Shown piece after piece: positions 51,159-64,000 of a stretch of 64,000 nucleotides of DNA. A model generated the notes under the pieces. The model saw only the letters and a program-made list of their open reading frames with translations. It ran no database searches and was not told the origin of the DNA. The translations under genes were made by a program, and so were the position numbers. Each line of letters starts with the position of its first letter. The stretch's first letter is position 1. Source of the stretch: Octopus sinensis (taxonomy: Eukaryota); the NCBI RefSeq assembly GCF_006345805.1, contig NC_043001.1, forward strand, positions 87,730,001 through 87,794,000, read 5' to 3'.

Positions 51159-53088
51159 GGGGGGGGATTAAAATTCTGTTCGCAGAAAGGTAATGAGAAA
51201 AGAAAGAGGCGTCAGTAACGAGAAGAGCAGTGCATTGATAGGCGAGGAATAAAATAACAGGCACTGAAAATACAGATTTTTCTGCCGCTAGTTTTTGGTT
51301 TGCAAACCAGAAGTCTTTGTTTTTAGCTCAGAAATGATTTTTCCGTTTCTGTTTCATACCGTTACAAATCTAATAATGTTTTCGTTTAGCATTCACATCC
51401 AGGAACTCCGTACATTTTCTTTTTCTTTCTCTTGTGTGTCTGGGTTCAATTGTTTGTAGTGGCGTTGGTATATTACCATTTTCTTTCGACGACATCTTGT
51501 TTATTCTTTTTTCTTTGTTCTAAAAACAAAATACTTGAAATATGTTGCCTACTGTAAATTTTTGTTTAACAGTCAATTTTCTTTTTTCTGTTGGACTGCA
51601 CATCAATTTTCCCCATATTAATGTCCAATTTGATAATTTTTAATATTGAAAAAATAATTTTTAAACTGGGGCAAAATAAGTAATGACTAATTTCAATAAA
51701 CTCTTCTCTTTAACTACATGGTGCAGAAATGTATCAGGAAGTGAACCAGAATGAATAAGCACCCCATATAACCTCTCATAACTTTTATTGTTTGAAATTT
51801 TCAGAAGATTTTTGCGAATTTGTATCCTACACACGGGAATCCATACGACTATGAAAATCAACGAAAACTTTTGTGTGTGTGTGTGTGTGATTTAAGAGCT
51901 ATTTGGCTGTAATATTTAGCACATCTCAAGACCAGCTGGTACACTCCCCTTTTGCTTGTCATTCTGACGTATTGAAAAATTCGAAAAATTGAAAGAGAAT
52001 TTTTTAATAGTTGTATGAATTCCCGTGTGTAGAACACAAATCCGCAAAAAATCAAAAAAATCAAAAAGTTATGAGAGGTTATATGGAGTGCTTAAACTGG
52101 AATTCTGCCGAGAGCTACTCCAGCAGATCATGAGAAGCTATAGAGAATATTTTATGTTGAGTTATTTGATTTAGTTGGGTTTCGTTAATTTCATATCGTA
52201 CCATTTTTCCATAATTCTCTTTCGTTTGACCTAGATATTTGAAATTTTTGCTGAATTTCTGATCTTTCTAGTGTCTAAGAGTGGAAATTGATGAGTACGA
52301 GATTTTCTTTTCAAATGTTATTCTGAAAAATTTGAAGAGACAAATTTACCTTATCTTGTCTTATTCATTTTGCCCCATCTAAATTTGTCTTTAATATGCT
52401 GAAATAATTTTGTGAAATAGTGTTTTGAAAGTTATAGTATATTAATGCATTTAGAGAAGGTTATTTGCTTGTAAAACTACTCTTTTCCTCTAAGTCAAAA
52501 GTGTAGTCAATATTACTCATTGTACCCCACCACACTTACTGGTGGCGGAGAAAGCAGGCTTTTGGAATAGCTGTCACATACATGTTGAAATTCTCTCTTT
52601 ATCTTGATAGCAAAACAACGAAGAGAGACTTTTTTAAAACAAAATGTATTAAAATCCATGTCTTTCAACTCCATATCTCTTTCCAGCACACACACACATT
52701 CTCATCATGGCTTTGGAACAGTAACAACCACTAAAATGGTATATTTTTATTTTCATTTGGGGGGGGGGGGTTCTGTAATTTTTTCGTATTCTATCCCCCT
52801 TCTTCCCTCCGCCATTGTACTTATCACATTGAACATAAAAACGAACACTGCAAGTGAATGTGTGAGGAAAAGAATTGAATTTTGACATCTGTAAAGCGAC
52901 ATTTTCAGTCATTTATTTAAAATTTCTCTGCTAACTCATCACATCCAATTACATCCAATAGATGGGTTTTGAGATATAGATTTTCTATATTTCCATAACT
53001 TTAATTCTTCTGTAAGAGGGGCCCACAGAATTTCAAGTCCTCAGGCCCTCCATGGTTTAAATTCAGTCTTGGCTATGTAAAATACTGT

Positions 53089-62318: not shown

Positions 62319-64000
62319 ACAGTATTTTACGTAGCCAAGACTGAATTTAAACCATGGAGGGCCTGAGCACTTGAAATTCTGTGGGCCCTTCATACATAAG
62401 AATTAAAGTTATGGAAATATAGAAAATCTATATCTCAAAACCCATCTATTGGATGTAATTGGATGTGATGAGTTAGCAGAGAAATTTTAAATAAATGACT
62501 AAAAATGTCGCTTTACGTGTCAAAATTCAATTCTTTTCCTCACATATTCACTTGCAGTGTTCGTTTTTATGTTCATTGTGGAAAGTACAATGCAGGAGAG
62601 AAGAAGGGGATAGAATACGATAAAATGACAGAAAATTACAAAAAAGTAGTTTTACAAATGTTCACTACCTTACAAAAACTATATCAGCTAGGCAAATGAC
62701 CTTCTCTAAATGCATCAAAAATACTATAACTTTCAAAACACTATTTCACAAAATTATCTCCGCTCTCTTTCAGCATATTAAAGACAAATTTAGATGGGGG
62801 CCAAATGAATAAGACAAGATAAGGTAAATTTGCCTCTTCAAATTTTTCAGAATAACATTTGAAAGAAAACCTCGTACTCATCAATTTCCACTCTTAGACA
62901 CTAGAAAGATCAGAAATTCAGCAAAACTTTAAAATATCTAGGTCAAACGAAAGAGAATTATGGAAAAATGGCACGATATGAAATTAACGAAACTCGACTA
63001 AATCAAATAACTCAACATAAAATATTCTCTATAGCTTCTCATGATCTGCTGGAGCAGCTCTCGGCAGAAAACTAGTTTAAGCACCCCATATAACCTCTCA
63101 TAACTTTTATATTTTGGGAATTTTCAAAAGTTTTTTGCGGATTTGTGTTCTACACACGGGAATTCATACAACTATTTAAAAATTCTCTTTTAGTTTTTCG
63201 AATTTTTCAAAAAGAACCACAGTTTAATATACGGACATTCCGAATTTTTTTTTTTTGCTTAATCGCAGCAATAGACCATTAAATGTGTTTATGGGGAGAA
63301 AGATTTTGAAAAACATCAAAACATCAGAATGACAAGTAAAAGGGGAGTGTACCAGCTGGTCTTGAGGCATGCTAAGAATTACAGCTAAATAGCTCTTAAA
63401 TCACTCACACCCACAAAAGTTTTCGTTGATTTTCATAGTCGTATGGATTCCCGTGTATAGAATACAAATTCGCAAAAATCTTCTGAAAATTTCAAACAAT
63501 AAAAGTTATGAGAGGTTATATGGGGTGCTTATTCATTCTGGTTCTCTTCCTGATACAGTTCTGCACCATGTAGTTAAAGAGAAGAGTTTATTGAAATTAG
63601 TCATTACTTATTTTGCCCCAGTTTAAAAATTATTTTTTTCAATATTGAAAATTATCAAATTGGACATTAATGCGGGGAAAATTGATGTGCAGTCTAACAG
63701 AGAAAAGAAAATTGATTGTTAAACATCAAAAAAGGTCGTGCTTCTGTTATTTTGTCAACCTTCAAATTTTCTCAACAAAAACCATAAGGGATTACTGAAA
63801 GCATAAACATCATCATAGTGGCACTGCAACACTGAAATATACTTCTGCCATGAAGTATCCTGTCACTGGCAAGAAAACCACTTCCTGCTTTCAGTTTCTG
63901 AATGGTGGTTCGAGACTAACTAAGTTGTTTATAGCCTTGATAAAGGTATCTCGAAATATAGCAAGTCGAAGTGACTCTAGCATCTATGAATAGGACAGAA

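What the first reader, a model, noticed from the sequence alone, without database searches (positions are those of the whole stretch)
51560..63730. ~12-kb head-to-head palindrome carrying paralogs 3 and 4
Seen: the arms mirror each other around a unique ~345-bp spacer (58059-58403). The non-coding DNA next to the spacer (about 56600-58050 vs 58410-59850) differs only by scattered substitutions, while the CDSs differ more in module content. The genes point away from the centre, so any promoters are duplicated back to back. Inference: arm-to-arm gene conversion or recent fold-back amplification, as in sex-chromosome ampliconic palindromes; spacer inversion between individuals is predicted.
Basis: partly seen in the sequence, partly recalled or inferred. 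Interest (0 to 1): 0.75.

Follow-up and report, generated by a model that had tools for sequence, protein, structure and literature searches.

The report
Old inverted gene pair in octopus
Two neighbouring copies of an octopus-only gene lie head to head as a real 12-kb inverted repeat on an autosome. The duplication is old, the two halves have evolved separately since before two octopus species split, and it is an ordinary inverted duplication, not an actively self-correcting sex-chromosome-style palindrome.

Summary
Window 51563-58058 and 58404-63725 are inverted copies around a 345-bp spacer. The inner non-coding arms are 97.8% identical and the gene arms about 94%. The genes diverge from the centre, and the CDSs differ in the number of 162-nt modules.

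The window is Octopus sinensis CM016863.1. The independently assembled O. vulgaris genome (chromosome 5; the Z is chromosome 16) has the same head-to-head pair, so the arms are not mis-joined haplotypes.

At 152 of 152 informative sites each arm groups with its orthologue in the other species, never with its partner arm. Homogenisation has therefore not operated since the species split. A third, directly oriented paralogue (P2) is closer to P4 in the 5' CDS and closer to P3 in the 3' CDS than P3 and P4 are to each other. This points to an old mosaic of ectopic conversion in a tandem family.

The inner arms form younger strata (0.5%, then 2.9%, against about 6% in the genes). This is not explained by slower evolution.

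The spacer is ancestral upstream DNA, with a collinear homologue upstream of the next paralogue, P5. O. vulgaris lacks 1,454 bp across the centre, which is most simply a deletion.

The protein family is restricted to Octopus and is predicted to be disordered. Interest is low to moderate.

The parts
51563..58058 (-). Left arm of the inverted repeat (the P3 unit read outwards from the centre)
   Evidence: mirrors 58404-63725. P3-P2 homology runs about 40 bp further out, to 51522.
58059..58403 (.). Spacer (345 bp). It is ancestral upstream sequence that continues the right arm. Its right ~85 bp is CA-rich.
   Evidence: no other copy in the window; one BLAST alignment, 58073-58703, crosses the spacer/right-arm boundary and matches the upstream region of paralogue P5 (73-76%) in both species; sequence.
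58404..63725 (+). Right arm of the inverted repeat (the P4 unit)
56589..58058 (-). Left inner non-coding arm, 97.8% identical to 58404-59870
58404..59870 (+). Right inner non-coding arm. Stratum i (58494-59258) has 4 arm differences; stratum ii (59259-59870) has 18.
56987..58440 (.). 1,454-bp segment absent from the O. vulgaris assembly: most of the left inner arm, the spacer, and 37 bp of the right arm
53089..55404 (-). P3 CDS, single exon, 771 aa. The open frame extends upstream to 55506. The orthologue CAI9723199.1 is 798 aa.
60387..62318 (+). P4 CDS, single exon, 643 aa. The orthologue CAI9723200.1 is 98% identical.
53431..54069 (-). Tandem array of 162-nt (54-aa) modules in P3, 3.9 copies
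61637..61952 (+). Tandem array of 162-nt modules in P4, 2 copies
55611..56435 (-). 5'-truncated non-LTR retrotransposon fragment, found only in the left arm (ORF 55697-56383, zf-RVT). It is shared with O. vulgaris, so it is older than the species split.
59871..60081 (+). 211 bp present only in the right arm
56648..56892 (-). Conserved upstream element of the gene unit, P3 copy. Candidate promoter or 5' UTR region.
   Evidence: homologous to P1 32413-32639, P2 41000-41095 and P4 59567-59811
59567..59811 (+). Conserved upstream element, P4 copy
41353..43146 (+). P2 CDS (597 aa), a directly oriented paralogue. It is closest to P4 in the 5' CDS and closest to P3 in the 3' CDS.
32655..34085 (+). 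P1 ORF, an older paralogue (~84% identity to P2-P4)

Best explanation
The window is an autosomal stretch of the Octopus sinensis genome. It carries a tandem cluster of an Octopus-restricted gene with a single-exon CDS. The encoded protein is predicted to be disordered, with an acidic head and a basic tail built from 54-aa modules.

One unit, P3, lies inverted against its neighbour P4, and this pair forms the 12-kb 'palindrome'. It arose from an old inverted duplication of a gene unit together with about 1.9 kb of its upstream DNA. The copy was joined 345 bp beyond the edge of the duplicated segment, which is the geometry of a fold-back or template switch (inferred).

Since then the arms have mostly evolved independently. 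They were already 5-7% apart when O. sinensis and O. vulgaris split, and they have not been homogenised since (shown).

Before the split, sporadic ectopic gene conversion shuffled tracts of 0.3-1 kb among P2, P3 and P4, whatever their orientation (inferred from the mosaic pattern). The higher identity of the inner non-coding arms is the arm-to-arm share of that process, because only P3 and P4 possess this DNA. The youngest tract, about 0.77 kb near the centre, dates to roughly the time of the species split.

The centre is structurally unstable. The O. vulgaris lineage has lost 1,454 bp spanning the spacer and most of one inner arm (polarity shown by the P5 homologue; whether the loss is real or an assembly artefact is not shown).
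For: - Identity of the sequence: window positions 31353-64000 are 100% identical to CM016863.1.
- Independent assembly: the ONT-based O. vulgaris assembly is collinear with window 30586-64000 and has the same divergent gene pair (PMC10700109).
- No homogenisation: the four-copy comparisons give 9 + 72 + 36 + 35 = 152 ortholog-split sites and 0 species-split or cross sites. The six-sequence comparison gives 147, 121 and 67 paralogue-specific splits shared by both species.
- Age: between-species K is 0.65% for the region, 0.56% for the inner arm and 0.7-0.9% for the CDSs. Arm divergence is 5.3-6.3% and dS is 0.064.
- Mosaic: in segment A, P2-P4 differ by 2.3% against 5.3% for P3-P4. In segment C, P2-P3 differ by 2.6% against 6.3%. 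In segment E, P2-P4 differ by 2.1% against 7.7%. Fisher p = 1.4e-6.
- Strata in the inner arm: 4 differences in 765 bp, 18 in 612 bp, and 84 in 1,271 bp of gene arm.
- Spacer is ancestral: four collinear blocks run from the spacer to the start codon and match the upstream region of P5 in both species.
- Copy present before the split: three-copy branch lengths are L = 14, R = 3 and V = 4-7.
- Autosomal location: OX597835.1 is chromosome 22, so OX597818.1 is chromosome 5. The Z is chromosome 16 / LG20.
- Family restricted to Octopus: 9 hits among 1.84 billion representative proteins; the 6 that carry an organism name are all Octopus, and 3 short hits are unnamed database fragments.
- No Pfam domain apart from a borderline CCDC85 motif. 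The AF2 mean pLDDT is 36.
- ORFs are intact in both species, with dN/dS 0.7-1.7 between paralogues.
Against: - Only two assemblies, one individual each, were available. The innermost 1.45 kb exists in only one of them, so neither its structure nor the reality of the O. vulgaris deletion is independently confirmed.
- The strata rest on small counts (4 against 18 substitutions).
- The three-copy polarity test weakens if six clustered substitutions in CA-rich DNA count as one event (9 against 3, p = 0.15).
- Twelve scattered sites show P4 carrying the P3 state in one species and the P2 state in the other, more than chance parallel mutation predicts. This suggests some very short exchange, ancestral polymorphism or polishing error. 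They are isolated sites flanked within 1-20 bp by unconverted sites.
- Which outer arm is the original copy cannot be decided. P3 shares about 40 bp more with P2 at its outer end than P4 does.
- Expression and function of the genes are untested.
Confidence: 0.75

Rival explanations
1. This is an actively maintained ampliconic palindrome. Frequent arm-to-arm gene conversion or a recent fold-back amplification keeps the arms alike, as on primate X and Y chromosomes.
For: The inner arms are 97.8% identical, and 99.5% over 765 bp near the centre. The genes are multicopy and fast-evolving. The centre is unstable, as in primate X palindromes.
Against: 152 ortholog-split sites against 0 species-split sites. 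The gene arms are about 94% identical and no closer to each other than to P2. The arms are 5.3-6.5 kb, and identity is below the 99% criterion. The locus is autosomal. No conversion tract longer than about 20 bp has arisen since the split.
Confidence: 0.05
2. This is an assembly artefact. Either the two arms are mis-joined haplotypes or a chimeric long read in O. sinensis, or the O. vulgaris 'deletion' is a collapsed palindrome centre in the ONT assembly.
For: Palindrome centres are hard to assemble. The 1,454-bp centre is present in one assembly only. No independent reads could be consulted (searches found nothing).
Against: Both arms have distinct orthologues, 98-99.8% identical, in the same arrangement in an independent assembly of another species. 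The arms differ by 6%, by an ~830-bp LINE fragment and by module number. The O. sinensis-only left inner arm carries 14 private substitutions. The spacer has an ancient collinear paralogue upstream of P5, which an artefact cannot create. A collapse in O. vulgaris remains possible.
Confidence: 0.15
3. The inner arms are the terminal inverted repeats of a foldback-type transposon that inserted between two pre-existing divergent genes.
For: The layout is long inverted repeats (1.47 kb) around a short unique centre. The identity step coincides with an indel-rich boundary at 56589/59870.
Against: The outer ~250 bp of each inner arm is the conserved upstream element shared with P1 and P2. The whole right inner arm plus the spacer is collinear with the upstream region of P5, in gene order and orientation. 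No other copies occur in 64 kb of window, 18 kb of extension or 48 kb of O. vulgaris sequence.
Confidence: 0.03
4. The inner arms are as old as the gene arms but look more alike because shared regulatory DNA is under purifying selection. No later conversion took place.
For: The region contains a conserved upstream element. The ratio of arm divergence to between-species divergence has wide confidence limits.
Against: Between-species divergence of the inner arm (0.56%; 0.52% in stratum i) equals the regional mean of 0.65%, and the CDSs are at 0.7-0.9%. Arm divergence, by contrast, differs 4- to 12-fold. dS between P3 and P4 (0.064) matches the non-coding divergence of the gene arms, so the genes are not inflated by selection.
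Confidence: 0.08

Closest known systems
Large palindromes of primate X and Y chromosomes (ampliconic palindromes; Jackson et al. 2021, PMC8327919)
   Same: Inverted arms carrying members of a multicopy, fast-evolving gene family around a short unique spacer. Structural change between species is concentrated at the centre of symmetry, and that paper reports small spacers as the least stable. Here 1,454 bp across the centre are missing in the sister species.
   Different: The arms are 5.3-6.5 kb, below the 8-kb minimum. Identity is 94-98%, below the 99% minimum. The arms group by orthologue, not by species, so there is no concerted evolution since the split. The locus is autosomal. Testis expression is unknown.
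Inverted segmental duplications formed by fold-back or template switching during replication or repair (general knowledge)
   Same: The inverted copy is joined a few hundred bp beyond the edge of the duplicated segment. This leaves a spacer that continues one arm in the ancestral order.
   Different: The junction lies in CA/TG-rich low-complexity DNA, so microhomology cannot be read. The event is old and has been overprinted by later conversion, indels and a LINE insertion.
Tandem gene families with ectopic (interlocus) gene conversion, as in many lineage-specific clusters (general knowledge)
   Same: There are at least five adjacent paralogues (P1-P5). The nearest relative switches along the gene. 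Module number changes by unequal exchange.
   Different: One member is inverted, so exchange with it must be non-crossover conversion. The family itself has no characterised relative outside Octopus.
Centre-break stabilisation of palindromes (central deletions that destroy symmetry; Cunningham et al. 2003, recalled from memory and not checked here)
   Same: The O. vulgaris state is an asymmetric deletion spanning the symmetry centre. It reduces the proximal inverted repeat from 1,470 bp with a 345-bp spacer to 401 bp with a 1,033-bp spacer.
   Different: This is a germline, evolutionary-scale event inferred from two assemblies. The mechanism was not observed. The junction shows only a short ATAGATA-type duplication.

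Membership tests
Sex-chromosome ampliconic palindrome (criteria of PMC8327919) | Arms at least 8 kb long | tested here: not met
   The arms are 6,496 bp (left, including an ~830-bp LINE fragment) and 5,322 bp (right). The criterion is quoted.
Sex-chromosome ampliconic palindrome (criteria of PMC8327919) | Arm-to-arm identity of at least 99% | tested here: not met
   97.76% in the inner arms and 90-95% in the gene arms. Only 765 bp reach 99.5%.
Sex-chromosome ampliconic palindrome (criteria of PMC8327919) | Concerted evolution: arms within a species are closer to each other than to the orthologous arms of another species | tested here: not met
   152 ortholog-split sites, 0 species-split sites. 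Orthologues are 98-99.8% identical; arms are 92-97.5% identical.
Sex-chromosome ampliconic palindrome (criteria of PMC8327919) | Located on a sex chromosome | tested here: not met
   OX597818.1 is O. vulgaris chromosome 5, by the accession series (chromosome 22 is OX597835.1). The Z is chromosome 16 / O. sinensis LG20. This rests on accession order and reported synteny, not on read depth.
Sex-chromosome ampliconic palindrome (criteria of PMC8327919) | Arm genes with testis-biased expression | not tested
   No expression data were reachable. The gene identifiers are absent from searched papers and supplements.
Sex-chromosome ampliconic palindrome (criteria of PMC8327919) | Rearrangements concentrated at the centre of symmetry | tested here: met
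   The only large structural difference between the two species in 33 kb is the 1,454-bp gap across the centre.
Inverted segmental duplication of fold-back or template-switch type | Two inverted copies of a segment separated by a short unique spacer that continues one copy in the ancestral order | tested here: met
   A single alignment, 58073-58703, crosses the spacer/right-arm boundary and matches the P5 upstream region. Homology of the left arm stops at the boundary.
Inverted segmental duplication of fold-back or template-switch type | Microhomology or a short inverted repeat at the junction | tested here: inconclusive
   The junction at 58058/58059 lies in TG/CA-rich low-complexity sequence.
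Foldback / long-TIR transposon | A self-contained element unrelated to host gene units, present in several copies | tested here: not met
   The arms are collinear with the upstream DNA of paralogues P1, P2 and P5. No further copies occur in about 130 kb examined. The whole genome was not searchable.
Tandem gene family with ectopic gene conversion | Adjacent paralogues whose nearest relative changes along the sequence | tested here: met
   Segments A, C and E differ in which pair is closest. Fisher p = 1.4e-6.
CCDC85 family (Pfam PF10226) | A match to the family profile over a substantial part of its 192 positions | tested here: not met
   Only P3 scores 25.5 bits (cutoff 23.8), summed over repeats. 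No single stretch passes, and the match covers profile positions 4-39 only. The other paralogues have no hit.

The most novel reading that the evidence does not exclude
This could be an autosomal invertebrate counterpart of mammalian ampliconic palindromes. On this reading, conversion is anchored at the centre, which would explain the strata of 0.5%, 2.9% and 6% moving outwards. The centre would be recurrently lost and rebuilt. The arms would shelter an Octopus-only, fast-evolving, disordered protein family whose expression is germline-biased (untested). The centre might also be polymorphic (present or absent, or inverted) within species.
Probability: 0.1. Interest if true: 0.6.

Novelty: new member of a known kind. 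Interest (0 to 1): 0.27.

Why it matters
On its own the locus matters little. It is a textbook-type inverted duplicate inside a lineage-specific gene cluster.

It is a clean worked example of one point: a palindromic layout with a high-identity centre does not by itself show ongoing gene conversion. A sister-species comparison settled the question here.

Three smaller points may be useful to cephalopod genomicists:
- The Octopus-restricted disordered-protein family (CAI9723198-200 and neighbours) evolves quickly, by substitution (dN/dS about 0.7-1.7) and by change in module number.
- The RefSeq model LOC118763368 fuses several paralogues and leaves P3 and P4 unannotated.
- The loss of the palindrome centre in O. 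vulgaris parallels the centre-of-symmetry instability described for primate X palindromes.

Tried and rejected
- Pfam scans of all paralogues and of P5, P0005-P0007 found nothing beyond a borderline CCDC85 motif in P3 and a sub-threshold Invasin_D4 hit in P0006.
- A profile search of 1.84 billion representative proteins found no relative attributable to any organism other than Octopus.
- The AF2 model has mean pLDDT 36, too low for a fold search, so none was run.
- Look-ups of the two spacer ORFs in public assemblies, meant to find independent contigs across the centre, returned nothing on record.
- Searches for the gene and chromosome identifiers in papers and supplements returned nothing.
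- I first read '0 species-split sites' as excluding all conversion. That was too simple, because conversion at an existing arm difference appears as a singleton or a 3-3 split. The six-sequence analysis then showed only isolated single sites or pairs and no tract.
- Rate heterogeneity as the cause of the identity step was rejected.
- A post-speciation fold-back extension in O. sinensis was rejected, for two reasons. The spacer has an ancient collinear paralogue, and the left copy has the long branch.
- Searches were rejected by the tool for term format. The script was abandoned and printed nothing.
- Bacterial promoter and terminator scans and tRNA or Rfam scans were not run, as they do not suit a eukaryotic intergenic region.
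Full report
**What the window is.** The composition (about 35% GC, many microsatellites), a Tc1/mariner transposase and non-LTR retroelement fragments indicate an animal genome. Protein search identifies it as octopus. Window positions 31353-64000 are 100% identical to Octopus sinensis CM016863.1 (GCA_006345805.1), which places window base 1 at about 87,730,001.

**Observation.** A self-comparison confirms the inverted repeat.
- The left arm is 51563-58058, the unique spacer 58059-58403 (345 bp), and the right arm 58404-63725.
- The inner non-coding arms (56589-58058 and 58404-59870) are 97.76% identical, with 28 substitutions and 3 small indels.
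- The gene arms are 90-95% identical.
- The arms are interrupted by an ~830-bp, 5'-truncated non-LTR retrotransposon fragment found only on the left (55611-56435; zf-RVT ORF) and by 211 bp found only on the right (59871-60081).
- The genes run outwards from the centre. The P3 CDS is 55404-53089 (771 aa) and the P4 CDS is 60387-62318 (643 aa). P3 has four 162-nt modules and P4 has two.

**Context: a tandem family, not an isolated palindrome.**
- The window holds four paralogues: P1 at 32655-34085, P2 at 41353-43146, P3 and P4. A fifth, P5, lies about 8 kb beyond the window end.
- P2 is in direct orientation with P4 and is 93-96% identical to both arms, as close as the arms are to each other.
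- Along the alignment the closest pair changes. In the 5' CDS, P2-P4 differ by 2.3% and P3-P4 by 5.3%. In the 3' CDS and proximal flank, P2-P3 differ by 2.6% and P3-P4 by 6.3%. In a distal flank segment, P2-P4 differ by 2.1% and P3-P4 by 7.7%. Fisher p = 1.4e-6.
- P3 and P4 are each other's closest relative only where P2 has no homologous DNA (the inner arms) and marginally at the outermost 460 bp.
- This is the signature of old ectopic conversion among three paralogues with a base divergence of about 6%.

**Independent assembly and the gene-conversion test.**
- The O. vulgaris genome was assembled from ONT reads of one male (PMC10700109). It carries orthologues of P1-P4 as separate single-exon CDSs (CAI9723198/199/200 for P2-P4) in the same order and orientation.
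- A stitched 48-kb O. vulgaris region is collinear with window 30586-64000. The arms are therefore not mis-joined haplotypes.
- Four-copy alignments (left and right arm in each species) were made for the proximal inner arm, the 5' gene half, the 3' end and the distal flank. They give 9 + 72 + 36 + 35 = 152 sites that split by orthologue. No site splits by species or crosswise.
- With P2 added, 147, 121 and 67 sites are specific to P3, P4 and P2 respectively, in both species.
- Eighteen sites show 3-3 splits. At twelve of them, P4 carries the P3 state in one species and the P2 state in the other. They are isolated single sites or pairs, with unconverted paralogue-specific sites 1-20 bp away. 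They may be very short exchanges, ancestral polymorphism or polishing cross-talk. They are not homogenising tracts.

**Ages.**
- Between-species substitution divergence is 0.65% for the region, 0.56% for the right inner arm and 0.7-0.9% for the CDSs.
- Arm divergence in the genes is 5.3-6.3%, and dS between P3 and P4 is 0.064. That is about 8-10 times the species divergence.
- The split is cited at about 2.5 My (Amor et al. 2019, as quoted in PMC10700109). On a rough clock the gene arms are therefore about 20-25 My old.
- Within the inner arm, divergence is not uniform. After a CA-rich stretch next to the spacer, 58494-59258 has 4 substitutions in 765 bp (0.5%). The stretch 59259-59870 has 18 in 612 bp (2.9%). 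Fisher p = 4e-4 between these two, and p = 7e-4 between the second and the 5' gene arm.
- The inner arm evolves at the ordinary rate between species, so these strata reflect later coalescence (arm-to-arm conversion), not constraint.
- In the 400 bp of inner arm present in four copies, all 9 informative sites split by orthologue. That conversion therefore predates the split.
- The innermost stratum coalesces at about the time of the split. It cannot be placed before or after, because O. vulgaris lacks the left copy.

**The centre.**
- O. vulgaris lacks window 56987-58440. This 1,454-bp segment comprises 1,072 bp of the left inner arm, the spacer and 37 bp of the right arm. There the proximal inverted repeat is only 401 bp, with a 1,033-bp gap.
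- The polarity follows from the upstream region of P5. It is collinear, in four blocks, with spacer, right inner arm, conserved upstream element and start codon of P4. One alignment (58073-58703, 73%) crosses the spacer/arm boundary.
- The same paralogous copy of the spacer exists upstream of P5 in O. vulgaris (76.5%).
- The spacer is therefore ancestral upstream DNA of the gene unit, and its absence in O. vulgaris is a loss.
- Branch lengths in the three-copy region are 14 for the O. sinensis left copy, 3 for the O. sinensis right copy and 4-7 for the O. vulgaris right copy. This fits a left copy that existed before the split (p = 0.013, or 0.15 if six clustered changes count as one event).
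- The same homology shows that the left arm ends exactly where the duplicated segment ended, and that the spacer simply continues the right arm. This is the geometry expected of a fold-back or template-switch inverted duplication. The mechanism is inferred, because the junction lies in TG/CA-rich DNA.
- Later inversions between arms could have exchanged the inner parts, so the original outer arm cannot be named. P3 shares about 40 bp more with P2 at its outer end than P4 does.

**Sex chromosome?** A preprint assigns O. vulgaris OX597835.1 to chromosome 22. By the accession series, OX597818.1 is therefore chromosome 5. The Z is chromosome 16 of that assembly and LG20 of O. sinensis, with near-perfect synteny. 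The locus is thus autosomal by inference. Read depth was not examined.

**Comparison with ampliconic palindromes.** The criteria used for primate X palindromes are arms of at least 8 kb, identity of at least 99%, and within-species arm divergence lower than between-species divergence. All three were tested here and not met. One property is shared: that study found rearrangements concentrated at the centre of symmetry, with small spacers the least stable. Here the centre is the only large structural difference between the two octopus species.

**The genes.**
- The proteins have no signal peptide or hydrophobic segment and are 69% polar or charged. Net charge is about -20 in the first 130 residues and about +30 to +36 after residue 300.
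- AF2 predicts disorder, with short helices in the modules (mean pLDDT 36).
- Pfam gives only a repeat-summed borderline CCDC85 motif in P3.
- A profile search of 1.84 billion representative proteins returns nine proteins. The six that carry an organism name are all Octopus, several on the same chromosome. The other three are short unnamed database fragments.
- ORFs of 597-798 codons are intact in both species. dN/dS between paralogues is 0.7-1.0 in the N-terminal region and 1.0-1.7 in the C-terminal tail. The reading frames are maintained, but the sequence evolves nearly neutrally or adaptively.
- Function is unknown. My best guess, which is inference only, is an intracellular, possibly nuclear or RNA-associated, disordered protein.

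**Verdict.** It is an old inverted duplicate within an autosomal, lineage-specific tandem cluster. It was shaped by sporadic conversion among all paralogues and by a deletion at the centre in one species. It is a new instance of a known kind, and interest is low to moderate.

Noticed in passing
window 6396-7460 (+): A 354-aa ORF of a Tc1/mariner transposase with HTH_Tnp_Tc3_2 and DDE_3 domains. It is apparently uninterrupted.
   Followed up: no
window 49326-49764: A satellite of 33-bp units arranged as a small near-palindrome. The arms are 49478-49619 and 49623-49764, with a 3-nt gap and 88% complementarity. It lies in the P2-P3 intergenic region, which is collinear with O. vulgaris.
   Followed up: no
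L001 1303-40951 (= window 32655 to about 72303): The RefSeq model LOC118763368 of O. sinensis spans about 39.6 kb from P1/P2 to the start of P5. Its product is P2 for 400 residues and then switches to other sequence. P3 and P4 have no separate model and sit inside its 'intron'. This is probably a chimeric annotation across paralogues.
   Followed up: partly
window 62319-63725 versus 51563-53088: Between-species divergence is 1.78% in the P4 3' flank but 0.33% in the mirrored P3 flank. About a third of the P4 differences fall on sites that vary among paralogues. The cause is unknown: short ectopic exchanges, polishing cross-talk between paralogues, or a local rate difference.
   Followed up: partly
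window 53431-54154 (P3 module array): The P3 orthologues differ by 81 bp (27 aa, half a module): 771 aa in O. sinensis and 798 aa in O. vulgaris. Module number has therefore changed since the split.
   Followed up: partly
L001 40861-45027 (beyond the window end): Paralogue P5 has a 1,388-aa ORF. Its N-terminus shows only short nucleotide matches to the starts of P1 and P4. It carries a different, roughly 100-aa repeated module rich in D, S, R and F, also seen in O. vulgaris P0006 and P0007. The family swaps whole repeat types.
   Followed up: no
window 29252-30782 and 1508-2198: Very long (TA)n arrays, up to about 800 bp, with GC down to 20%. The alignment to O. vulgaris breaks off at 30586, inside one of them.
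   Followed up: no
window 55404-55506 and 32655-32756: In P1 and P3 the open frame continues upstream of the annotated start, with a conserved peptide (FIDDVIVE.K..LNHLVSFL). In P2 and P4 it is closed by a stop. This may be an alternative start or a conserved 5' leader.
   Followed up: no
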